IMG/VR virus record: IMGVR_UViG_3300023184_000024
Location: 1 to 64,000 of that record
Strand: one strand, 5' to 3'
Length of the DNA stretch: 64,000 bases
Part shown: piece by piece, positions 5,306 to 60,746 of the stretch
How the letters are laid out: the number at the start of each line of letters is the position of its first letter
How positions within the stretch are numbered: the first letter of the stretch is position 1
Notes under the pieces: generated by a model
Database searches by the model: none
Seen by the model: only the letters and a program-made list of their open reading frames with translations
What the model was told of the DNA's origin: nothing
Program-made: the position numbers and the translations under genes

Positions 5306-6738
5306 TAACAGCAGTGATTGCGTCGGTTCCTTGGACTGACACTGACTCCCCATTGATGGCGCCAGGTGTGTTAAAAAGCGCACTGACTCAGCATGGAATA
5401 AAATCAGTGGCCATTGATTTAAATGCAGAAATACGTCAATACATTTTGACCCACCCAAAGAAAGATGACTTGTTGCAGTTTATATTGACCGAACAAGTCA
5501 CTGCCGGATGTGAGCAAGATGTACACGACCTGATAAACATGATGGTTGATCGTATACTAGCATTTAATCCAGAATGGGCAATATTGAGTCTGTTGACCTA
5601 CATAAGTCAGATACCAAACAAATGGTTGTGCTTCCAACTACGGCAGAGAAATCCAAACATTAAAATTATCATTGGCGGCCCTGGGTGTTTCAGTAGTTTA
5701 AAAAGCATTGATTCGTACGCAGTGAATTTAAAATCTCAAGGGTTGGTTGACCATTTTGTAGCCGGTGATGGTGAAGTGGCCCTGCCTATGCTGTTAAAGG
5801 GCGAAACCGGTCCGGGGATCAACAATGTTGATTGGCAACAGCTAGATAACATAGATATTTTGCCAAGTCCAGACTACGATGACTACGATTGGTCACTGTA
5901 TCGATTAAAAAAAGTCAACATCCTAGGTAGTCGTGGCTGTGTCAGAGAATGTACTTTTTGTGACATACACGAACATTGGCCAAAATTTCAATGGAGGTCA
6001 GGTGCAAATATCTTTGAAGAAATGAAGCATCAAAGAGAAAAGTACGGTATTAATTATTTTTCATTTGCTGACAGTTTGGTCAATGGCAACCAGCGTGAGT
6101 ACCGGGACCTCATACAACGACTAGCTGATTACAACCAAGCCAAGACTGATCCTGATGATAAAATCAACTGGACCGGTGCATTCATTGTACGCCCGGCCGA
6201 TCAGATGAAAGAACGCGACTGGGAATTGACTGCTGCCAGTGGTGCAGTCATGTTGTCCGTGGGAGTAGAGAGTTTTGTAGAGCACATACGATACCATATT
6301 AAAAAGAAATTCAGCAATGCTGACCTTGACTATGCTTTACAAATGGCACAGAAGCACACGGTGTCCATGCAGTTGTTGATGATTGTTGGGTACGTAACTG
6401 AAACTCAAGAAGATCACGAACAGCAAAAACAATGGGTCACTGATAACCAGCATTATATAAACTCACCCATCAAGCTTATTCAAATTGGCAGTGGACTGGG
6501 CATACTTCCCGGCACCTGGCTACAACGCAATCAAGAAAGCTTGGGTATAAAAATTGGCAGTGCTGATGTGTATCAAGATTGGGTTAGAGAATCAATTGGC
6601 AGCACTCCGTTGGTTCGCATGCAATGGCACAAAGAGATGAAGCAACACATGGAACAAACAGGGTTTACTGTGGCCTACCTCAAAGATAACCATGTGTTGA
6701 TTGAAAATTATCTACGGGATCGTTATGCCAAAACTTAG
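5302..6738 (+). CDS. B12-binding (class B) radical SAM enzyme
   Basis: IIIGGP, GDGE, SRGCVRECTFC (CxxxCxxC), GVES. Confidence 0.9.
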   Translation: MITAVIASVPWTDTDSPLMAPGVLKSALTQHGIKSVAIDLNAEIRQYILTHPKKDDLLQFILTEQVTAGCEQDVHDLINMMVDRILAFNPEWAILSLLTYISQIPNKWLCFQLRQRNPNIKIIIGGPGCFSSLKSIDSYAVNLKSQGLVDHFVAGDGEVALPMLLKGETGPGINNVDWQQLDNIDILPSPDYDDYDWSLYRLKKVNILGSRGCVRECTFCDIHEHWPKFQWRSGANIFEEMKHQREKYGINYFSFADSLVNGNQREYRDLIQRLADYNQAKTDPDDKINWTGAFIVRPADQMKERDWELTAASGAVMLSVGVESFVEHIRYHIKKKFSNADLDYALQMAQKHTVSMQLLMIVGYVTETQEDHEQQKQWVTDNQHYINSPIKLIQIGSGLGILPGTWLQRNQESLGIKIGSADVYQDWVRESIGSTPLVRMQWHKEMKQHMEQTGFTVAYLKDNHVLIENYLRDRYAKT

Positions 6739-52169: not shown

Positions 52170-53072
52170 ATGACCAAAGACCTTAATATTCTTTATTTCA
52201 GTGGAGGTGGTGGATTCTTATTCTGCCATTTATTGTTGCTGGGTGAACAGCATTTTGCACACATTGATTATCCGCAGGCCTATGATCAGTCCGGGCCTTG
52301 GGTACTACAACTGGCACAGGATCCTGATTTTTGCCAGTGGATCATGGACCAGGGTAGACTGCCTGAATCAGACTACCAAGGATTGAAACAGCCGTCATGG
52401 CCTAGTTACTCAGACTACGTTGCGCAAGGCAATCATTGGCCTGAAGTGCAACAGGCCCTGCTGTATGCAGTGGCCCAAAACAACAATGACATTGCCGACG
52501 TTGCTGAGTTGAATTATCGTAAATTTCGTGTGTTTTTTCAACATGTGATGCAGTCACAGTGGGATCCAGGACGACGTTACTGGAAGCAAACTGAATACTG
52601 GCCGCGCAACGACACCACTGGAACAACACCCATACCGCCAGGGGTGGGCAGACTATATCTACACGGACACAAACTCACTGACTGGTTGGAATCCCCACAC
52701 CCAGGCACAAAAGTATTGTTGTACACAGATGTGCGCAGTCATCTGCGATTGGCCAGCTATAAAAATGCTTGGTTTTACAATGATCTAGACGGCCGGACCT
52801 GGAAACCCACTAGAACAAATGGGCATCGCTGGGTGCTGAGGAACTGGACTGGGCACATGCCCGACGGGCAGCCGGTGTTCAACCAAGCTGCCACTGCTGA
52901 AAAATACGCTGACATTGTGATAAAATTGCAGGATTTGGTCAACTATCCAGAAGCAACATTGGCCAAGTTTGGCATGAGTTTCAACCACAGTCAGCAAAAA
53001 TTGCTGGCGCACTGGCGCAGTCAGCACCCAGTTGAACTGCTTGAACGACTGGGCATCCACCCGAACAACTAA
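52170..53072 (+). CDS. hypothetical protein, possible sulfotransferase fold
   Basis: LYFSGGGG.LF.HLL; internal Y..LK.PSWP motif. Confidence 0.55.
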   Translation: MTKDLNILYFSGGGGFLFCHLLLLGEQHFAHIDYPQAYDQSGPWVLQLAQDPDFCQWIMDQGRLPESDYQGLKQPSWPSYSDYVAQGNHWPEVQQALLYAVAQNNNDIADVAELNYRKFRVFFQHVMQSQWDPGRRYWKQTEYWPRNDTTGTTPIPPGVGRLYLHGHKLTDWLESPHPGTKVLLYTDVRSHLRLASYKNAWFYNDLDGRTWKPTRTNGHRWVLRNWTGHMPDGQPVFNQAATAEKYADIVIKLQDLVNYPEATLAKFGMSFNHSQQKLLAHWRSQHPVELLERLGIHPNN

Positions 53073-53094
53073 ATATATCAGCCTAGGAACTAAC

Positions 53095-53730
53095 ATGAGT
53101 TTTGAATTTGAATTTACCCAACAAAAATTAGCAGAAATGGTGCCAGGAAATCCCTACATCGACCATTGGTACGAAGCCATTGCTGAAATACTACCCGAGT
53201 ACGAAATTAACACACCAGCCCGAGTGGCCATGTTCATTGCACAGTGTGCGCATGAAAGTGGTGGGTTCCGTGCCATCAAAGAAAACTTGAATTATCGTGC
53301 CGCAAGTTTGCGCAAGTTATTCCCCAAGTATTTTGCCGACGATGCTGTGGCAAATCGCTATGCCAGCATGCCCAACAAGCAAGAAGCCATTGCCAATAGA
53401 ATCTATGCCAACAGAATGGGCAACGGCCCAGAAGAAAGCGGTGACGGCTATCGCTACTGTGGCCGTGGACTAATTCAACTCACTGGCAAAAACAACTACA
53501 CTTTGTTTGCTGGCAGCTTGGGCATACCTGTAGAAGAGTGTGCCGACTACCTGGCCACCTTTGAAGGTGCTGTGCAAAGTGCTTGCTGGTTCTGGGAAAC
53601 CAACAATTTAAATCAATGGGCCGACAAAGGTGATGTGCTCACTGCAACAAAACGCATCAATGGTGGCACAATTGGCCTAGAAGATCGCATCAAACACTAC
53701 AACCATGCACTGCATGTGTTAGGAGCCTGA
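53095..53730 (+). CDS. endolysin, glycoside hydrolase family 19
   Basis: F.AQ.AHES, ENLNY, Y.GRGLIQLTG..NY, SACWFW, INGG..GL.DR. Confidence 0.93.
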   Translation: MSFEFEFTQQKLAEMVPGNPYIDHWYEAIAEILPEYEINTPARVAMFIAQCAHESGGFRAIKENLNYRAASLRKLFPKYFADDAVANRYASMPNKQEAIANRIYANRMGNGPEESGDGYRYCGRGLIQLTGKNNYTLFAGSLGIPVEECADYLATFEGAVQSACWFWETNNLNQWADKGDVLTATKRINGGTIGLEDRIKHYNHALHVLGA

Positions 53731-53734
53731 ACCT

Positions 53735-54211
53735 GTGTGGATACTACATTTCTTACCTGACGGATTTCTAGAATTTGTAATCTATGCAATATTGGGTGCA
53801 GGGTTTGTGGCCACTGTGGTGTCATTGGTGTTTATCAATCCCTTGTTGAGATTCTTTCCCGGCATTGCTGGCACATATAGATTGATACAATTGGCCAGTG
53901 TGGCGGTGTTCCTGGTGGGTGTTTATCTATGGGGCGGGTACAGCACAGAAATGCGCTGGCGCAAGGAAGTTGCAGAACTGCAACAACGAGTTGAAGAAGC
54001 AAAGGCAGCGGCAACAGCAGCCAATGAGTTGATTGTCGAAGATAGTAAAACCAAAGTCAAGTACATCAAAGGACGCACAGAGTATATCACACAGTACATT
54101 GACAAAGAGATTGTCAAATACGACACCAAGTTTTTACCCGGAGGAGTCTGTGAGATTCCTAGAGAATTTATCAAGGCACACAATGATGCCGCGGAGGCAC
54201 CCAAAAAATGA
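53735..54211 (+). CDS. inner-membrane spanin (Rz-like)
   Basis: N-terminal TM helices, coiled coil, C-terminal C.IP...HN.AA. Confidence 0.65.
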   Translation: MWILHFLPDGFLEFVIYAILGAGFVATVVSLVFINPLLRFFPGIAGTYRLIQLASVAVFLVGVYLWGGYSTEMRWRKEVAELQQRVEEAKAAATAANELIVEDSKTKVKYIKGRTEYITQYIDKEIVKYDTKFLPGGVCEIPREFIKAHNDAAEAPKK

Positions 54212-55248
54212 GAGCAAACGAATTCGTCACTGAAGGCTGGAGCCAAAAGTACAAGAACAGCATCAACTGTAGTCACCCCAAAGGCTTTAGTCAACGTGCT
54301 CATTGTGCTGGTAAAAAGAAACACAATGAGTCAATTGAAATGGAAATGGTGTGTGAAGACTGCGGTATGTGCCAAACACACGGCAACCTCAATGAAATTA
54401 AAAAAGGTGCCAAAGACTCAAATGGCTTTACCAAGTGCTGGCCGGGTAAACATGCAGTAGGTACTAAGAAGGGCAAGAATGGCGGCCAGGTTCGTAACTG
54501 TAAGCCCAACGAAAGCGCAGAATTAAATGAATTTGCACTGCCTGGTGGTAGCGGCGGCGATTCAGGACAGTGGTACACTGATGACGAGCTTGCAGACATC
54601 ATTGGTGACGATTGGTTCGAAGACTTTGACGTTAGTAACGATGGATTCAACATTGATGCCTACGGTGAAAAAGCCAAGAAAAACCTAGTGGGTTATGCCA
54701 ACTCCTGGTTTGACGATAAAGGTTACAATGTCAACGTAATGGGCGTAGAACACAATGATGTTGACCATGACTTAAAATGGTACATTGTTGGTAGTTTTCA
54801 CAATCCTAACTTTGCAGATAAAGATGTAGACGAAGGCTTGACAGAAGAGTTTGATCTTATTGAATCTATTATTGAAGGTATTGCGGCACAAAATGGTGTA
54901 GATGCTGAAGCAGTCTGGGCGGACCTAGAATCATTAACTGAAGATGAGTTGTATGCTTTTGCTGTGACTTCACAACTGAACGAAGACTGGCAGAAAGCCA
55001 ACAAGCGTGACAGCACAGATGGCATGAGTCAAAAAGCAGTTAATGCTTATCGCAGAGAGAATCCAGGTAGCAAGTTAAAGACTGCTGTGACTACCAAGCC
55101 CTCAAAGTTGAAGAAAGGGTCAAAGGCCAGCAAGCGTAGATCAAGTTATTGCAGTCGTAGTCGTGGGCAAATGAAAATGCACAACATCAGCTGTGCTAAG
55201 ACTCCCGACAAGGCCATCTGCAAAGCACGACGTAGGTGGAACTGCTGA
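54208..55248 (+). CDS. modular internal-head-like protein (C-terminal DUF6321-like)
   Basis: Leader MRANEFVTE; Cys-rich modules; C-terminal RR.SYC.RS...RRRWNC. Confidence 0.7.
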   Translation: MRANEFVTEGWSQKYKNSINCSHPKGFSQRAHCAGKKKHNESIEMEMVCEDCGMCQTHGNLNEIKKGAKDSNGFTKCWPGKHAVGTKKGKNGGQVRNCKPNESAELNEFALPGGSGGDSGQWYTDDELADIIGDDWFEDFDVSNDGFNIDAYGEKAKKNLVGYANSWFDDKGYNVNVMGVEHNDVDHDLKWYIVGSFHNPNFADKDVDEGLTEEFDLIESIIEGIAAQNGVDAEAVWADLESLTEDELYAFAVTSQLNEDWQKANKRDSTDGMSQKAVNAYRRENPGSKLKTAVTTKPSKLKKGSKASKRRSSYCSRSRGQMKMHNISCAKTPDKAICKARRRWNC

Positions 55249-55514
55249 TGAGATATCTTGTGTTTGCACTAGCACTAGGGTTGACTGCGTGTACCACAGT
55301 TCCTGTCACTGCACAGTTTCCCAACAAGCCCGGAGAATTAGTTTCAACTGCTTGCCCCAATTTGGAAAAATTAAAAGACGCACCAACATTGAGTGATGTG
55401 TCACGTACCATTACCAATAATTATGGTGCCTACTACGAATGTGCTGTCAAGGTTGACATGTGGATTCGCTGGTACAATGAACAACGAGTTATATTTGAAG
55501 GAGTTAGTAAATGA
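55248..55514 (+). CDS. outer-membrane lipoprotein spanin (Rz1-like)
   Basis: Lipobox LTAC; FP..P...CP.L...NY..Y.EC. Confidence 0.7.
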   Translation: MRYLVFALALGLTACTTVPVTAQFPNKPGELVSTACPNLEKLKDAPTLSDVSRTITNNYGAYYECAVKVDMWIRWYNEQRVIFEGVSK

Positions 55515-56047
55515 CCGAAGAAAAGAAACCCCTATCACGCAGTGAACGTGAAGCACAGATCAAAGACAAAGCAGGTCTTGTCATTGTTGTCATGGCCCTG
55601 TTCCTGGCAGCCAACACCTACCTTGCCAACAGCTTTAGTGGCACTGCGCAAACCAATCTGTTGCAGGCCAGCAACACTTACGGCTTTTATCAGAGTAAAT
55701 CAATCAAGCAAACTCTAGCTGAAGGACAGTTAGAAGAAGCTCGAAAGGGCACAGACAAGGCACGTATCGAAAAGTTAGAAGCCAAGATTGCTAGATACGA
55801 AAGTGAGCCTGCCACCGGCGAAGGTAAAAAAGAACTGTTGGCCAAGGCACGAGCACAGGAAGCCGCACGTGACGAGGCTAGAGCACACGGACCTTGGTTG
55901 ACATTTTCGGGCATGTTGTTTCAACTTGCCATTGTGTTACTTTCTGCTAGTATTCTAGCAGTGAATAACCGCATGTACAAAGGTAGTTTGGCAGTGGGCG
56001 CACTGGCTGCTGTGCTAATGGCCCAAGGCTATTGGTTGTGGATTTAA
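55511..56047 (+). CDS. DUF4337-like membrane protein
   Basis: A...Y..YQSKSIK...FQ.AIVL.SA. Confidence 0.7.
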   Translation: MTEEKKPLSRSEREAQIKDKAGLVIVVMALFLAANTYLANSFSGTAQTNLLQASNTYGFYQSKSIKQTLAEGQLEEARKGTDKARIEKLEAKIARYESEPATGEGKKELLAKARAQEAARDEARAHGPWLTFSGMLFQLAIVLLSASILAVNNRMYKGSLAVGALAAVLMAQGYWLWI

Positions 56048-56062
56048 TAACAAGGACGTAGT

Positions 56063-56653
56063 ATGACAGCAAAAATAAGCGCGAGCGAGCAGAAAAAAGA
56101 AGACTGGATGAATTCAAAGTGGCGTCCGGCCATGGGTTGGTTGTACATGTTTGTGTGTTTCTTTGACTTTGTACTTGCACCCATACTCTGGAGCCTAGTA
56201 CAGGCCTTGTACAAGGGTGGTGTCAATGTACAATGGCAACCACTTACACTGCAAGGTGCTGGGCTATTCCACATCTCCATGGGCGCTGTGCTGGGTCTTG
56301 CCGCTTATGGTAGAACACAAGAAAAACTAAACGGAGCAAACAATGGCGGAATCAACTTACCACCGAATGTCGGAACAACATATCAAGCTCCGGCACCAGC
56401 TGGACAGTCCATGCCCGGTGCATTTGGTGCCCCAACAGCAACAACAGTCACACAGTCCTGGGGCACAACTCCCATCGGTGGCGGGTACGGAACCTCAGCA
56501 CCCGGATTCGGGGCAGTACCACCAGCCTCAACAGGCTTTGGTGGCAATACAGGATTTGGAGCGTCAGCGTCTAATGGCTTTGGGCCAGCAACGGTGACAA
56601 CTGGATGGGGCGGCAAGAAGGTTGTACCCCAACAAGACGATCCATTAATTTAA
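56063..56653 (+). CDS. holin (3TM, GTA-release type) with low-complexity tail
   Basis: WRPAMGW...LG..AYGRTQEK. Confidence 0.8.
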   Translation: MTAKISASEQKKEDWMNSKWRPAMGWLYMFVCFFDFVLAPILWSLVQALYKGGVNVQWQPLTLQGAGLFHISMGAVLGLAAYGRTQEKLNGANNGGINLPPNVGTTYQAPAPAGQSMPGAFGAPTATTVTQSWGTTPIGGGYGTSAPGFGAVPPASTGFGGNTGFGASASNGFGPATVTTGWGGKKVVPQQDDPLI

Positions 56654-56663
56654 GGAAATTAAA

Positions 56664-56882
56664 ATGAAAAACGTTATATTTGTAGCAGGACTATGTTTGA
56701 CATTGGCACAGCCAGTGTTGGCCGAAGAGCCAAAAAAAGAAACTGTACGAGTCTGTATTGATGTACAAGGCAAGGATGGCAAGCCTGTCTTGGACGCTAA
56801 AACGGGTAAACCCAAACAGGACTGCAAAGAAATGAAAAAGCACAAAAAGCACGAAGGCACAGCTATTCCTGAAAAGAAATAA
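56664..56882 (+). CDS. small secreted basic protein
   Basis: Signal peptide, two Cys, KHKKHEG. Confidence 0.7.
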   Translation: MKNVIFVAGLCLTLAQPVLAEEPKKETVRVCIDVQGKDGKPVLDAKTGKPKQDCKEMKKHKKHEGTAIPEKK

Positions 56883-56883
56883 C

Positions 56884-56930
56884 TTGACTTAACTCAACAA
56901 GTCCTGTATAATTGTTGTACAGGACTTTTT
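56884..56930 (+). promoter_or_regulatory. early promoter embedded in a terminator hairpin
   Basis: TTGACT-17-TATAAT(56907); stem AAGTCCTGTA/TACAGGACTT followed by TTT. Confidence 0.75.
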
Positions 56931-56931
56931 C

Positions 56932-57312
56932 ATGACTGATAAATTTATTATTAACGATTTACCCAATGGCACATACAGTGTAACTTGGCCAGGGCATGAA
57001 CACATTGTGGTCAATAATCCCGGCAAAGTACTAAAGTTGCTGGAGATCATGTTTGATGTTGTGGGTGTAGATGAAGCCATGATTGGTTTGTACGAACGGG
57101 GCAGAGACAACCACTGGCGCACCATGCACATTTCAAATATGCTATGGTTAGAAGATCATGTTCGTGAACACATGGCCAAACGGCTGGCAGAATATACTAT
57201 ACCAGGTGTAAGATTTACAGACATTTATCAAGCAGAGAAGTTCAAGAATCACATGGAAAAACTGTTGGTCTGGGCCAGACTCAGCAACGGAATGTCATGG
57301 TGCCATGAGTGA
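56932..57312 (+). CDS. hypothetical protein
   Basis: ORF after promoter. Confidence 0.7.
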   Translation: MTDKFIINDLPNGTYSVTWPGHEHIVVNNPGKVLKLLEIMFDVVGVDEAMIGLYERGRDNHWRTMHISNMLWLEDHVREHMAKRLAEYTIPGVRFTDIYQAEKFKNHMEKLLVWARLSNGMSWCHE

Positions 57313-57604
57313 TTTAGAAAACGAAATAGCCCAGACTCTAGCTGACGAAATTGCCAAAGAAATAGACAAAGAAATACTAGATACATTTATGACGGACATA
57401 TTAGTAGAAGAAGGTTGGATAAAAACTAAAATCAATCCTGCGTTTCCACCTAACGGAATGATGTCTGGCAGTTTCAATGAATGGTACAGCCAAACCGCAG
57501 AATGGGTACACTTAAACGCCCAAGGTGACTACAAGTTGTTAAAAGGTCAGTGGTTATTCAAGGACCCCAAAGACGCCACTGCGTTCTTATTGAGGTGGTC
57601 ATGA
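57305..57604 (+). CDS. small protein of the F-x4-D-x3-F-x-L-x-W family
   Basis: WLFKDPKDATAFLLRWS. Confidence 0.75.
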   Translation: MSDLENEIAQTLADEIAKEIDKEILDTFMTDILVEEGWIKTKINPAFPPNGMMSGSFNEWYSQTAEWVHLNAQGDYKLLKGQWLFKDPKDATAFLLRWS

Positions 57605-57623
57605 CAACGACATAATTATTAAC

Positions 57624-58418
57624 ATGAGTGACTTTTACACAGTGTTGGGTGTTGGCAAAACAGCATCTGCCGACGAAATTAAACGTGCCTATAGGAAGCT
57701 GGCCAGCCAACACCATCCCGACAAAGGTGGTGACACAAAGAAATTCCAGGAAGTTGAAGAAGCTTATCGCACCCTGAGTGATCCGGCACAGCGACAGGCC
57801 TACGACAACCCTCGACCACAGCATAACAGCATGCATGGTCAACATCCAGGATTCAATTTCAACGAAATATTCAATATGTTTGGCGCAAGGTTTGGGCCAG
57901 GCGCGGATCATTTTGCCGGCGGTCAACAACGTAGCGCCAGGATAAGCTTGTGGATAAAACTGTCAGATATTGTTGATGGCGGTCCCAGGGTAATCGGGGT
58001 TAATACATCAACCGGCAGCAAAAACATAGAGATACAAATACCTGCCGGCATTGATGATGGCGATAATGTTCGATATGCACAAATCTTGGATGGCAATGAC
58101 TTAATTGTACAATTCCGTGTACAACCTGAGCCTGGATGGGAACGACAAGGTAGCACATTAATTACCGCAATAACTGTGGACTTCTGGGATTTGATACTGG
58201 GCGGAGAGCCCATGGTAAAAACCTTGAATGATCGAACATTGGCCATGACCATTGCTCCAATGACTCAGCCCGGCACTACCCTGCGTATTCGTGGATTTGG
58301 GTTGCCGGCCAAACAAGGAGGCCCCAAGGGGGACCTGTTAGTAAAACTCAATGCTGAATTACCAAAAAATATTCCTGATAATTTAAAGGATATAATTCGG
58401 CAAACTCGTGGTCAATAA
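57624..58418 (+). CDS. dnaJ: DnaJ-class (type II, CbpA-like) chaperone
   Basis: J domain with HPD; G/F linker; C-terminal IP.G...TQPG..LR..G.GLP; no Zn finger. Confidence 0.9.
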   Translation: MSDFYTVLGVGKTASADEIKRAYRKLASQHHPDKGGDTKKFQEVEEAYRTLSDPAQRQAYDNPRPQHNSMHGQHPGFNFNEIFNMFGARFGPGADHFAGGQQRSARISLWIKLSDIVDGGPRVIGVNTSTGSKNIEIQIPAGIDDGDNVRYAQILDGNDLIVQFRVQPEPGWERQGSTLITAITVDFWDLILGGEPMVKTLNDRTLAMTIAPMTQPGTTLRIRGFGLPAKQGGPKGDLLVKLNAELPKNIPDNLKDIIRQTRGQ

Positions 58419-58484: not shown

Positions 58485-60746
58485 ATGCAGAACCCGGAAA
58501 TTGAACAAATTGTAGACAATGCAGTCAAGATTGCACGTAGTAAAACTCATGCGTATGTGTTGACCGAGCATTTACTGCTGTCTATGTTGGCCCATGCCCC
58601 ATTTAGAACTGTGTTGGTCAAGTTTGGCACAGATGTAGACATGCTGGAAAAAGAAGTAAACGGATATCTCGACAGTCTAGTCAATCTCATTGACATCAGC
58701 GAGGATCTCAGGCCAAGAAAAACCAATACCTTGGAACGATTGTTTAATCGTGCACTCACGCAGGTGATGTTTACTGGCCGACGTGCTATTACCACAGCAG
58801 ATTTGTATTTGTCAATAATGAATGAATCAAACAGCCATGCACATTATTTCTTGTTAAAATACGGAGTATCCAAACAAGAGTTTATTAAATTCTGGGACTC
58901 TCATTACAATCACAACGATTCCCGCATTGATGATGCGCAGGCCAACGAAATCCTTGAAGAATACTGTATCAACATGTCCGGCCTGGCCCAGGCAGATAGA
59001 TTGGAACCAGTGATTGGTCGCGAACAAGAGTTAGAAGAATTAATCACAGTGCTGGCTCGTAGGTTCAAAGCCAATGTACTCATGGTGGGTGACCCCGGCG
59101 TAGGAAAAACAGCCATAGTTGAAGGACTGGCACAGCGTATTGCAAAAAATACAGTGCCAGAATTTTTAAAGAATCACGAAGTCTGGGGTTTAGAAATTGG
59201 TAATCTGTTGGCCGGCAGTAAGTATCGCGGAGACTTTGAAGAAAAACTCAAGCATATTATCAAGGCCCTGGAACACAAAAAAAATTGTGTGCTGTTCATC
59301 GACGAAGCGCACACCATGAAAGGTGCAGGGTCAACCAGTGGATCCAGTCTGGACTTTGCCAACATGATCAAGCCGGCCATTACCAAAGGTGTGCTCAAAG
59401 TTGTGGCAAGTACAACCTGGGAAGAGTACTACGAAAGCTTTGAAAAGGATCGTGCGTTGATGCGCCGTTTCCATAGACTCAGCATCGACGAACCGTCACG
59501 TGAAAACACAGAAAAGATCTTGATTGGCCTGAGCCCACGTTTGGAAAAGTTTCACAATGTCATGATTGACACTGACGCAATCACAGCGGCAGTGGAACTG
59601 AGTGCAAGATACATTCATGATAAAAAGAACCCCGACAAAAGCATTGATCTAATTGATGCTGCCTGTGCCAGAGAACGTGTCAAGGACCAAGGCAGTGTCA
59701 CCATCAACAAAGATTTGATTCTTGCGCAGGTCAGTCGTATTGCCAATGTGCCAATGGATAGACTGCAAAATGCACAAAGTAAACGAATACTTGAATTGGA
59801 AAGCAATGTCAAACAAAGAATTTACGGCCAAGACCAAGTCATTGAGCCAGTGCTGGAAAGAGTCTACGTTAGTTTTGCCGGGCTGAACAATCCCACTAAA
59901 CCAATGTCTAGTTTCTTGTTTTTAGGACCAACTGGCACAGGTAAAACAGAATTTGCAAAAACTTTGGCAGATAATCTAGACATGAAATTGTTAAAATATG
60001 ACATGAGCGAGTACCAGGAAAAACACACTGTGAGCAGTTTAATCGGTGCACCCCCGGGCTACGTGGGCTACGAAGACAGCAACTTAGCCGGCGGCAAACT
60101 GATCAACGATCTGAGCAAAAATCCATTTTCAATTTTGCTGTTTGACGAAATTGAAAAAGCGCACCCAGATGTCAGTAATATATTGTTGCAAATGTTGGAC
60201 GAAGGCAAGATCACAGGAAGCAACGGCAAGACAGTTGACTGTAAGAACACCATCATCATCATGACTTCAAACTTGGGTGCAAGAGACAACGAAAACAACA
60301 ACATTGGTTTCAGCGTTGATCTAACTCGCACCGGCAGTGAAGACAAGGCTTTGAAAGATTTCTTCAAGCCCGAATTGCGCAATCGCATTGACATGATTTG
60401 TAAATTTAATCCATTGAATCAATTGGCTATTAAGAAGATTGTGGTCAAGTTCATCGACGAACTCAAGCAAAGTTTAGTGGAACGACAAGTTAAACTCAAC
60501 TTCAGCGAAGCTGCCATTGATCTACTGGCCAAAGAAGGCTATGATCCTAAAATGGGTGCAAGACCGTTGTCACGAAAAATTGATGAATTAATACGTGTAC
60601 CATTGAGTCGCAAAATTTTGTTCGAACGTCTTGAAAATTGTGTCGTAGACGTTGATGTTGCTGATGAGAAAATTAAATTTTCTCACATTGATTCCGCTGT
60701 AGTACAACCCAAGGTTGATAATAATGGATACATTGTCCTTGACTAA
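58485..60746 (+). CDS. clpA: ATP-dependent Clp protease ATP-binding subunit ClpA
   Basis: GDPGVGKT and GPTGTGKT; no M-domain; IGF loop; both early (58423-58451) and late (58416) promoters. Confidence 0.92.
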   Translation: MQNPEIEQIVDNAVKIARSKTHAYVLTEHLLLSMLAHAPFRTVLVKFGTDVDMLEKEVNGYLDSLVNLIDISEDLRPRKTNTLERLFNRALTQVMFTGRRAITTADLYLSIMNESNSHAHYFLLKYGVSKQEFIKFWDSHYNHNDSRIDDAQANEILEEYCINMSGLAQADRLEPVIGREQELEELITVLARRFKANVLMVGDPGVGKTAIVEGLAQRIAKNTVPEFLKNHEVWGLEIGNLLAGSKYRGDFEEKLKHIIKALEHKKNCVLFIDEAHTMKGAGSTSGSSLDFANMIKPAITKGVLKVVASTTWEEYYESFEKDRALMRRFHRLSIDEPSRENTEKILIGLSPRLEKFHNVMIDTDAITAAVELSARYIHDKKNPDKSIDLIDAACARERVKDQGSVTINKDLILAQVSRIANVPMDRLQNAQSKRILELESNVKQRIYGQDQVIEPVLERVYVSFAGLNNPTKPMSSFLFLGPTGTGKTEFAKTLADNLDMKLLKYDMSEYQEKHTVSSLIGAPPGYVGYEDSNLAGGKLINDLSKNPFSILLFDEIEKAHPDVSNILLQMLDEGKITGSNGKTVDCKNTIIIMTSNLGARDNENNNIGFSVDLTRTGSEDKALKDFFKPELRNRIDMICKFNPLNQLAIKKIVVKFIDELKQSLVERQVKLNFSEAAIDLLAKEGYDPKMGARPLSRKIDELIRVPLSRKILFERLENCVVDVDVADEKIKFSHIDSAVVQPKVDNNGYIVLD

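What the first reader, a model, noticed from the sequence alone, without database searches (positions are those of the whole stretch)
54208..55248. Probable capsid-packaged polyprotein with T4-like targeting leader, inserted between the spanins
Seen: the leader MRANEFVTE, then modules bounded by [ILV]-x-E sites (VTE, LNE, LNE, VDE, LTE, LNE). The modules are WSQKYK..INC.HPKGFSQRAHC, CEDCGMC..H, CWPG...GTKK...VRNC, an acidic domain, and a basic C-terminal RR.SYC.RS...WNC domain. Established: T4 internal proteins carry a ~10-aa capsid targeting sequence ending in I/L-x-E, which prohead protease gp21 removes, and IPI is an injected anti-restriction factor. Inference: a beads-on-a-string precursor cut into several small Cys-rich peptides that are injected with the DNA.
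Basis: partly seen in the sequence, partly recalled or inferred. Interest (0 to 1): 0.65.

Follow-up and report, generated by a model that had tools for sequence, protein, structure and literature searches.

The report
Capsid-tagged modular internal-protein precursor
A gene wedged into the lysis cassette of a 353-kb freshwater jumbo phage most likely encodes a capsid-targeted precursor, tagged like the internal proteins of phage T4, whose conserved basic modules and swappable cargo domains are joined by protease-type cut sites; it looks like a widespread way for phages to carry varied proteins into the host with their DNA.

Summary
The ORF is real (54208-55248, +, 346 aa) and has the leader, modules and [ILV]-x-E sites as described: 10 sites against 3.2±1.6 in shuffles.

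The T4-like reading holds up computationally.
- The genome (352,754 bp, terminal repeats, lake metagenome) encodes a gp21-family prohead protease (Peptidase_S77).
- Seven otherwise unrelated ORFs in it start with the same 9-residue leader. It resembles the T4 IPII/IPIII capsid targeting sequence, and its codons differ at synonymous sites.
- Among 119 homologs that start M[KR], the leader's Glu9 is invariant and position 7 is I/V/L in 116.

The protein belongs to a very large DUF6321 family (more than 7,700 hits). Members range from leader + DUF6321 (96-98 aa, net charge about +20, T4-IP-like) to strings of about 600 aa. The 120 nearest homologs hold 38 cargo types. These are joined combinatorially, and in varying order, at linkers ending in [ILVM]-x-E. 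Some cargoes start with a Tat signal directly after such a site.

Cleavage, packaging and injection are inferred, not shown. The cargo's function is unknown: it is acidic, with a weakly POTRA-like fold. The position between the spanins is shared only with the closest relative.

Verdict: a new variant of a known kind (T4-type internal proteins), interest about 0.68.

The parts
54208..55248 (+). Whole ORF, 346 aa (P0001): leader-tagged modular precursor, DUF6321 family
54208..54234 (+). Leader aa 1-9 (MRANEFVTE), a T4-CTS-like propeptide ending in V-T-E
   Evidence: Compared with T4 IPII/IPIII/IPI N-termini. Same leader on 7 ORFs of the genome. Logo from 119 homologs.
54235..54396 (+). Modules 1+2, aa 10-63: basic 2-Cys module plus a CxxCxxC..H module, ending in L-N-E
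   Evidence: Near-invariant in homologs. Absent in P0002, where the leader joins module 3 directly. Module 1 stands alone behind a leader in cyanophage SynMITS9220M01 and follows DUF6321 in P0186. AF2 pLDDT is below 40.
54397..54531 (+). Module 3, aa 64-108: basic 2-Cys module (net +6) plus the linker ..NESAELNE
   Evidence: The linker after this module ends in [ILVM]xE in 108/111 homologs.
54532..54831 (+). Variable cargo domain, aa 109-208: acidic (net -16), no Cys, predicted beta-alpha-alpha-beta-beta fold, ending in V-D-E
   Evidence: The only confident part of the AF2 model (pLDDT 71-88). Weak POTRA-like matches (Z 5.2; TM 0.55). One of 38 cargo types. The same cargo sits after the helical domain in P0008.
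54832..54981 (+). Conserved acidic helical domain, aa 209-258 (net -13), ending in L-N-E
   Evidence: Present in most family members; the site before DUF6321 is kept as [ILVM]xE despite sequence change.
54982..55245 (+). DUF6321 domain, aa 259-346: basic (net +19), 4 Cys
   Evidence: PF19846, 36 bits against a cut-off of 28.5. Only viral clusters. Minimal family members are leader + this domain. 93-95% aa identity at 77-80% nt identity to relatives.
53735..54211 (+). Upstream neighbour: i-spanin-like (N-terminal TM, coiled coil)
   Evidence: Weak Rz-like PHROG hits; ATGA overlap with the ORF.
55248..55514 (+). Downstream neighbour: o-spanin-like lipoprotein (lipobox LTAC)
   Evidence: PF23793 LysC E 5.6e-5, phrog_456 E 9.4e-6; TGATG overlap.
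53095..53730 (+). GH19-type endolysin of the same cassette
   Evidence: phrog_181 E 8.7e-77, PF00182.
56063..56653 (+). 3-TM holin of the same cassette
   Evidence: PF11351 E 3.7e-7, phrog_3427.

Best explanation
P0001 is a precursor of internal head proteins of a T4-related jumbo phage.

Proposed mechanism (all inferred):
1. It is made late, together with the lysis genes.
2. Its 9-residue N-terminal leader directs it into the scaffolding core of the prohead, as the T4 capsid targeting sequence does.
3. The phage's gp21-family prohead protease then removes the leader after V-T-E. It most likely also cuts the exposed inter-module linkers after L-N-E(63), L-N-E(108), V-D-E/L-T-E(208/212) and L-N-E(258).
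4. This releases two or three small basic Cys-containing peptides, one acidic cargo domain of about 100 aa, an acidic helical piece and the very basic DUF6321 domain.
5. The basic pieces probably stay on the packaged DNA, as the basic T4 IPs do, and the pieces enter the host with the DNA.

Shown: the sequence features, their recurrence and conservation, the protease gene, and modular shuffling at the sites.
Not shown: targeting, cutting, retention, injection and any effector activity.
For: (1) The genome encodes a Peptidase_S77 (T4 gp21) protease: 92.5 bits, over the cut-off, at G000:C1:224562-225188. It lies within a portal-protease-scaffold-MCP module. The MCP is 65% identical to those of PA5oct-type jumbo phages and related to T4-like MCPs.

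(2) T4 IPIII and IPII begin MKTYQEFIAE and IPI begins MKTFKEF..ITE. gp21 cuts after L/I-x-E, and the first 10 residues of IPIII suffice for packaging (PMC9026906). Here the leader is M-[KR]-A-x-E-[FI]-[IVL]-x-E.

(3) The leader opens 7 unrelated ORFs of the genome, always at the first Met. There is only one internal regex hit. A DNA pattern scan gave 6 forward hits against 0 in the control. Codons differ at synonymous sites, so selection is on the peptide. Neighbouring genes in related contigs carry it too.

(4) Leader logo from 119 homologs: Glu9 119/119, I/V/L at position 7 in 116/119, position 8 free.

(5) Linkers:
- After module 3, 108/111 homologs have [ILVM]xE within 3-7 residues.
- About 104/111 have it directly before the helical domain, with P2 free (N, S, A, T, D, H, I, E).

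(6) There are 38 cargo types in 120 homologs. The same cargo occurs alone or in tandem, joined by QGVAE-type linkers.
- Modules are deleted (P0002), inserted before module 1 (P0086), moved (cargo of P0001 sits after the helical domain in P0008; module 1 sits after DUF6321 in P0186) or reduced to leader + DUF6321.
- The joint always follows xxE.

(7) QGV[AT]E occurs in only one ORF of at least 80 aa in the genome. That ORF is another leader-tagged protein, which has it 4 times, plus one KGVTE.

(8) In five homologs a Tat signal (PF10518, up to 23.5 bits) lies in mid-protein, with RR two residues after a predicted cut. A Tat signal only makes sense at a new N-terminus.

(9) The conserved modules are under strong purifying selection.

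(10) T4-like cyanophage proteins near terminase and tail-fibre genes carry the same modules, each preceded by xxE.
Against: - No virion proteome, N-terminal sequence or transcript exists for this phage or any close relative (no RNA run).
- The window's own leader has Val, not Leu/Ile, at P3.
- The module 1/2 boundary is not a canonical site. Some [ILV]xE sites (VCE, LIE, IIE) lie inside probable folded elements, so the motif alone does not predict cuts.
- Linkers could be conserved simply as flexible spacers.
- DUF6321 also occurs without any leader in pelagiphage podoviruses, which have no gp21-type system. The domain therefore has a function independent of T4-type packaging.
- The closest cultured MCP relatives (PA5oct, Vibrio 2.275.O, Phosso) lack this leader.
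- The automated junction test gave only about twofold enrichment within 2 residues (0.32 vs 0.15), because homology usually breaks at the start of the short linker.
- The mature parts have no sequence similarity to T4 IPs.
Confidence: 0.55

Rival explanations
1. A leader-only substrate. The protein is packaged through its leader and loses only those 9 residues, as T4 IPs do. It then stays a single multi-domain internal protein, and the [ILVM]xE linkers are just flexible, acidic spacers between domains.
For: T4 IPs lose only their N-terminal propeptide. AF2 gives no information on linker exposure. Several [ILV]xE sites lie inside helices (LIE, IIE), so the motif is not sufficient for cutting.
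Against: P3 and P1 of the linkers are conserved while P2 and the flanks vary. The same linker type is confined to leader-tagged proteins in the genome. Mid-protein Tat signals directly after the sites need a free N-terminus. Module order is not fixed, which is unusual for a protein that works as one folded unit.
Confidence: 0.2
2. Not a virion protein. It is an intracellular nucleic-acid-binding or regulatory protein built around the basic DUF6321 domain. The shared N-terminus serves another purpose, such as translation or stability control, or targeting to another compartment or partner.
For: DUF6321 stands alone, without a leader, among early/replication genes of Pelagibacter podophage HTVC100P. 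One source names a homolog a 'nucleic acid-binding Zn-ribbon protein'. No structural-protein annotation exists for any PHROG hit.
Against: The leader closely matches the one experimentally defined capsid targeting sequence and co-occurs with a gp21-family protease. Its Glu9 and hydrophobic P3 are the very positions needed for gp21 processing in T4. Cyanophage homologs sit beside terminase and tail-fibre genes. The gene is translationally coupled within a late lysis cassette.
Confidence: 0.15
3. A lysis accessory. It is placed between the i-spanin and o-spanin genes because it acts with them, for example as a regulator of spanin or holin function.
For: Position and translational coupling in the cassette. 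The same gap is occupied in the closest relative, L012.
Against: Most homologs lie elsewhere, next to large leader-tagged proteins and a ferritin gene, with no lysis genes nearby. There is no signal peptide or TM segment. In L012 the gap holds two different leader-tagged genes, so it looks like an insertion hot spot rather than a functional unit.
Confidence: 0.03
4. A RiPP-like precursor: a leader peptide followed by several Cys-rich core peptides that are modified and released by dedicated enzymes.
For: Leader plus repeated short Cys-rich segments. Radical SAM genes lie near two homologs.
Against: Cargoes are folded domains of 50-360 aa. The leader is shared with large enzymes such as GNAT-like proteins. 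No modification enzymes flank the gene here. The radical SAM neighbours are not conserved.
Confidence: 0.02

Closest known systems
Phage T4 internal proteins IPI, IPII, IPIII (and Alt) with their capsid targeting sequence
   Same: A short N-terminal leader of similar sequence (MK..EFI.E) ending in a hydrophobic-x-Glu site. It is shared by several otherwise unrelated genes of one genome, which also has a gp21-family protease. Minimal family members (9-aa leader + 88-aa basic domain) match T4 IPs in size and charge type. T4 ipII/ipIII also sit next to the endolysin gene.
   Different: The mature parts have no sequence similarity. Here the tagged protein is a string of modules with internal sites and a hypervariable cargo slot inside one ORF, whereas T4 varies whole small genes. 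The leader is 9 residues, not 10-19, and the window's copy has Val at P3. The host phage is a 353-kb PA5oct-like jumbo phage from lakes.
T4 prohead core proteins gp22/gp67/gp68, and inner-body/ejection proteins of phiKZ, 201phi2-1 and SPN3US
   Same: Head-internal proteins cut at several sites after Glu by a gp21-type protease. Cleavage-site redundancy is known there, and some fragments stay with the DNA (PMC9026906).
   Different: Those are scaffold or inner-body components with fixed architecture. The phiKZ-type motif is S/A-x-E. They are not combinatorial strings of exchangeable cargo domains.
Polyvalent proteins of phages and conjugative elements (Iyer et al. 2017, PMC5512222)
   Same: Many unrelated domains in one polypeptide, thought to be packaged in the head, delivered with the DNA and processed into separate effectors. 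ParB and GNAT domains recur there, as they do in this family and in the neighbouring leader-tagged proteins.
   Different: Polyvalent proteins are large, carry recognisable enzymatic domains and often their own MPTase peptidase. Here, processing would be done in trans by the prohead protease at 3-residue motifs. An N-terminal targeting leader is present, and almost all cargoes lack any Pfam family.
Pfam DUF6321 (PF19846)
   Same: The C-terminal 88 residues match above the gathering cut-off. The family is exclusively viral.
   Different: Pfam gives no function. The link of the domain to a T4-like leader and to cleavage-site-bounded strings is not recorded in the papers searched (no paper mentions DUF6321).
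Polymorphic toxin/effector loci (analogy only)
   Same: Conserved trafficking ends frame a rapidly exchanged payload.
   Different: A different delivery route. The payload here is internal rather than C-terminal, and there is no evidence of toxicity or immunity genes.

Membership tests
T4-type CTS-tagged internal head proteins | N-terminal propeptide of about 10-19 residues resembling MKTYQEFIAE / MKTFKEF.. | tested here: met
   Window MRANEFVTE, family consensus MKANEFITE, against T4 IPIII/IPII/IPI translated from NC_000866.
T4-type CTS-tagged internal head proteins | Propeptide ends in the gp21 motif L/I-x-E | tested here: met
   Glu9 in 119/119 homologs and I/V/L at P3 in 116/119. The window's own copy has Val (VTE), a conservative departure from L/I.
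T4-type CTS-tagged internal head proteins | Same leader on several otherwise unrelated proteins of one phage | tested here: met
   7 ORFs in G000, all at the first Met, with synonymous codon variation. The same holds in related contigs.
T4-type CTS-tagged internal head proteins | Genome encodes a gp21-family (Peptidase_S77) prohead protease within a T4-like head module | tested here: met
   PF03420 92.5 bits and phrog_207 E 2e-59, flanked by portal, scaffold-like protein and MCP.
T4-type CTS-tagged internal head proteins | Mature protein present inside virions with the leader removed, and ejected into the host | not testable with these tools
   Uncultured phage; no proteome; no RNA runs.
T4-type CTS-tagged internal head proteins | Leader binds the scaffolding core | tested here: inconclusive
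   The complex prediction of aa 1-40 with the scaffold-like protein gave no answer.
T4-type CTS-tagged internal head proteins | Sequence homology of the mature part to IPI/IPII/IPIII | tested here: not met
   blastp best E 0.49 over 14 residues. T4 IPs are not homologous to each other either, so this is not a strict requirement.
DUF6321 (PF19846) | HMM match above the gathering score | tested here: met
   36 bits against 28.5, aa 267-344; 39.2 bits in the genome scan, single copy.
Polyvalent proteins (Iyer et al. 2017) | Several recognisable conflict-related enzymatic or DNA-binding domains, often with an own processing peptidase | tested here: not met
   P0001 has only DUF6321 in Pfam. Among 20 homologs, one has ParB_N and one a weak Zn ribbon. 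No peptidase domain.
Spanin / lysis accessory | Conserved linkage to spanin genes; membrane or periplasmic targeting | tested here: not met
   Linkage is seen only here and in L012. Four other contexts lack lysis genes. No signal peptide or TM segment.
Tat-exported cargo (seen in homologs) | Twin-arginine signal | tested here: not met
   Absent from P0001. Present in P0009, P0049, P0110, P0113 and P0057.

The most novel reading that the evidence does not exclude
Aquatic T4-related phages carry a hitherto undescribed 'effector string' system. A T4-like capsid targeting leader and a conserved basic anchor (DUF6321) frame a recombination-shuffled set of cargo domains. The prohead protease separates them inside the capsid, so that one gene delivers several different proteins into the next host. 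Some of these carry Tat signals and would be re-exported to the periplasm after injection. DUF6321 would then be the principal internal head protein of a very abundant group of freshwater and marine phages.
Probability: 0.4. Interest if true: 0.8.

Novelty: new variant of a known kind. Interest (0 to 1): 0.68.

Why it matters
Injected internal proteins are among the first phage weapons a host meets, but they are known in detail almost only from T4 and phiKZ-type phages.

If this reading is right:
- A simple sequence rule (leader + [ILVM]xE-bounded modules + gp21-type protease) identifies thousands of candidate injected proteins in uncultured lake and ocean phages. There are already 38 cargo types among the nearest 120 homologs, nearly all without known families.
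- It gives a first functional context to DUF6321.
- It shows a polyprotein strategy for diversifying capsid cargo.
- It raises a testable oddity: Tat-signal cargo delivered through the capsid.
- The leader could be useful as a packaging tag beyond T4.

Tried and rejected
- Near-identical DNA in cultured phages: none.
- Structure: the AF2 model of the whole protein is poor (mean pLDDT 54) and the N-terminal Cys modules are unresolved. Foldseek against PDB gave nothing at E<=0.001. VIA-align and the Atlas gave only weak POTRA-like matches to the cargo (Z 5.2, TM 0.55), which I do not treat as a fold assignment. I did not use the second fold job, because the available DUF6321 alignment is too shallow (84-97% identity).
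- Complex prediction of leader + scaffold-like protein: no answer, so it is neither support nor evidence against.
- Automated junction statistics from BLAST HSP ends were noisy: 0.32 vs 0.15 within 2 residues. The explicit listing of linkers and cargo types is more informative.
- A test for depletion of sites inside the cargo had no power (expected 0.6).
- The leader pattern is absent from PA5oct, Vibrio phage 2.275.O and Phosso, so their published proteomes cannot be used.
- Literature: no paper mentions DUF6321. None links CTS to cyanophage proteins beyond a general review. No PA5oct cleavage data were found.
- Considered and rejected: a nucleotide-level signal rather than a peptide, a lysis accessory, and a RiPP precursor (see rivals).
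- The large representative-protein search was not run, since the word search and family scans sufficed.
Full report
**1. Observation**

The ORF at 54208-55248 (+) is open and encodes 346 aa (P0001). Charges and Cys counts per module are:

| Part | Residues | Net charge | Cys |
|---|---|---|---|
| Leader MRANEFVTE | 1-9 | | |
| Basic module | 10-44 | +5 | 2 |
| CxxCxxC..H module | 45-63 | | |
| Basic module | 64-108 | +6 | 2 |
| Acidic domain | 109-208 | -16 | 0 |
| Acidic helical stretch | 209-258 | -13 | |
| Basic C-terminal domain | 259-346 | +19 | 4 |

The protein has ten [ILV]xE tripeptides, against 3.2±1.6 in shuffles (P=0.0006).

The gene overlaps its upstream neighbour by ATGA and its downstream neighbour by TGATG. 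The neighbours form a lysis cassette:
- GH19 endolysin;
- an i-spanin-like protein;
- P0001;
- an Rz1/LysC-like lipoprotein;
- a DUF4337 protein;
- a 3-TM holin.

No + strand terminator-like site lies between 53000 and 56700.

**2. Genome**

The window is the first 64 kb of a 352,754-bp IMG/VR virus record with direct terminal repeats. It is found in lake and freshwater metagenomes from several studies, and no RNA run holds it.

The head module lies at 221.6-227.5 kb. It encodes a portal, a Peptidase_S77 (T4 gp21 family) protease (92.5 bits), a coiled-coil scaffold-like protein and a 405-aa major capsid protein. The capsid protein is 65% identical to those of the jumbo phages PA5oct, Vibrio phage 2.275.O and Sinorhizobium phage Phosso. 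It is more distantly related to T4-like and cyanophage capsid proteins.

**3. The leader**

T4 IPIII and IPII, translated from NC_000866, begin MKTYQEFIAE. IPI begins MKTFKEF and is cut after ITE.

From the review PMC9026906:
- gp21 cuts after L/I-x-E;
- the first 10 residues of IPIII suffice for packaging;
- residues 4 and 7 matter for targeting and residues 8 and 10 for processing;
- the CTS is thought to let T4-like phages load varied proteins.

The window's leader aligns as N-E-F-V-T-E to T4's Q-E-F-I-A-E.

A regex for the leader, run over all six-frame ORF segments of the genome, hits eight times. Seven hits are at the first Met of an ORF of 123-542 aa. A degenerate DNA pattern gives 6 forward hits and none in the reversed control. 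The seven leaders use different synonymous codons and have unrelated upstream DNA, so the peptide itself is conserved.

The other six tagged proteins have no solid family. Two are weakly GNAT-like and one weakly ParB-like. Contigs of related phages also carry runs of genes that open with this leader.

**4. The family**

A word search returns more than 7,700 proteins. All those listed carry DUF6321, which is also P0001's only significant Pfam domain.

Of the 121 family sequences examined (P0001 and the 120 nearest hits), 119 start M[KR]. In these the leader is M1, K/R2, E/D5, F/I6, I/V/L7 (116/119) and E9 (119/119). The N-terminal modules and the last 140 residues are 80-97% identical, while the middle differs completely.

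I count 38 cargo types. The linker after module 3 ends in [ILVM]xE within 3-7 residues in 108 of 111 sequences. The residues before the helical domain are [ILM]xE in about 104 of 111. P2 is free while P3 and P1 are fixed.

Cargo domains are combined freely through QGVAE-type linkers:
- the cargo of P0007 plus that of P0024 makes P0092;
- the cargo of P0065 lies inside P0061;
- the cargo of P0019 plus a Tat-type cargo makes P0057.

Modules can also be absent, added or moved:
- absent: P0002 joins the leader directly to module 3, at the same boundary as NLNE|IKKG in P0001;
- added in front of module 1: P0086;
- moved: P0001's own cargo lies after the helical domain in P0008, and module 1 lies after DUF6321 in P0186.

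A second word search with DUF6321 alone shows the minimal members. These are 96-98 aa proteins, a 9-residue leader followed directly by DUF6321, with net charge +18 to +21. That is the format of a T4 internal protein. In every architecture DUF6321 starts right after xxE.

**5. Further evidence**

- A second tagged protein of this genome (64466-66094, 542 aa) is itself a string with five (Q/K)GV(A/T)E linkers. QGV[AT]E occurs in no other ORF of at least 80 aa in the genome.
- The basic Cys-containing tail of the tagged protein at 73336 follows VEE. The same module follows the leader directly in a 66-aa protein of a related contig.
- Five homologs have a Pfam TAT_signal match in mid-protein, up to 23.5 bits against a cut-off of 22.7. 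The twin arginines lie two residues after the predicted cut. Such a signal is only meaningful if a new N-terminus is created there.
- The conserved ends are under strong purifying selection: 93-95% amino-acid identity at 77-80% nucleotide identity over the DUF6321 codons.
- Logan contigs from four lake runs break inside the gene. More contigs pile up on the conserved ends than on the cargo, as expected if many co-occurring phages share the ends (depth from contigs is only indicative).

**6. Relatives in cultured phages**

T4-like cyanophages (Kyanoviridae) carry the modules in long proteins next to terminase or tail-fibre genes, each module preceded by xxE. SynMITS9220M01 has a 39-aa ORF consisting of a T4-IPI-like leader plus module 1.

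Pelagibacter podophage HTVC100P has a stand-alone, leaderless 93-aa DUF6321 among early genes. The domain therefore has a function of its own, most simply nucleic-acid binding given its charge.

**7. Genomic context**

The position between the spanin genes recurs only in the closest full-length relative (76% identity). There, two different leader-tagged genes fill the same gap.

Four other homologs lie after large leader-tagged proteins and before a ferritin gene. The gap therefore looks like an insertion site within a late operon, not a functional link to lysis. T4's ipII and ipIII also lie beside its endolysin gene.

**8. Structure**

AF2 with a 46-sequence alignment gives mean pLDDT 54. Only residues about 120-200 are confident, with a beta-alpha-alpha-beta-beta arrangement. 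Foldseek finds nothing. VIA-align and the Atlas give weak POTRA-like similarity. I assign no function to the cargo. DUF6321 matches only viral clusters.

**9. Interpretation**

The most economical reading is a T4-type internal-protein precursor:
- the leader targets the prohead core;
- the gp21-family protease removes the leader and probably separates the modules;
- the basic pieces stay with the DNA;
- the pieces enter the next host.

Shown: the motif, its recurrence, the protease gene and shuffling at the sites. Inferred: packaging, cutting and injection.

Rivals are leader-only processing, a non-virion DNA-binding role, a lysis accessory and a RiPP-like precursor, in decreasing order of plausibility.

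**10. Comparison and novelty**

It works like T4 IPs/Alt and, for multi-site cutting, like T4 core proteins and phiKZ inner-body proteins. Conceptually it resembles the polyvalent proteins of Iyer et al. (PMC5512222).

It differs in being a leader-tagged, trans-processed string with a hypervariable cargo slot framed by conserved basic modules. I found no paper describing this or mentioning DUF6321.

I rate it a new variant of a known kind.

Noticed in passing
window 53735-54211 and 55248-55514; L012:3494-3937 and 6014-6283: The i-spanin and o-spanin genes are separated by 1 kb of inserted leader-tagged gene. In relative L012 the gap holds two such genes, and the endolysin lies downstream instead of upstream. 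This is an unusual split-spanin arrangement, and the gap may be an insertion hot spot.
   Followed up: partly
homologs P0009, P0049, P0110, P0113 (aa 108-128) and P0057 (aa 148-168); remnant in P0068: A twin-arginine (Tat) signal lies in the middle of the polyprotein, starting directly after a predicted xL(D/E)E cut. It implies that a cargo piece is routed to the periplasm after processing.
   Followed up: partly
G000:C1:64466-66094 (L004:466-2094), 466 bases past the window's end: A 542-aa leader-tagged protein built as a string with five (Q/K)GV(A/T)E linkers. It has no Pfam or PHROG family.
   Followed up: partly
G000:C1:71792-73914 (L004:7792-9914) and 263121-263878 (L005:1121-1878): Five more leader-tagged ORFs. 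Two are weakly GNAT-like and one weakly ParB-like. The ORF at 73336 ends in a basic Cys tail that occurs alone behind the leader in L009:4726-4926. The two ORFs at 263 kb share a C-terminal FKGYPR motif.
   Followed up: partly
window 57624-58418 and 58485-60746: A DnaJ-like protein (J-domain HPD motif visible) and a 753-aa ClpA/B-like AAA+ ATPase follow the lysis cassette. The same pair follows it in L012.
   Followed up: no
window 55511-56047: A DUF4337 protein (E 5.5e-29) with a C-terminal hydrophobic segment sits between the o-spanin and the holin. It may be a further lysis-cassette component.
   Followed up: no
L013:2501-2620 (Synechococcus phage SynMITS9220M01): An annotated 39-aa ORF consists only of a T4-IPI-like leader (MKTFKQFQE) plus module 1. 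The next ORF, of 665 aa, lies just before the large terminase gene.
   Followed up: partly
window 52500-57500 in runs X1-X4: Assembly unitigs break repeatedly inside the lysis cassette and the P0001 gene. Contigs of related phages join the endolysin end directly to the holin region (joint 53624 to 56105, in three runs). This indicates gene-order variants in the same lakes.
   Followed up: no
L003:5417-6998 (phage T4): T4 ipII and ipIII lie directly beside the endolysin gene e, paralleling the placement of the leader-tagged gene beside the endolysin here.
   Followed up: no
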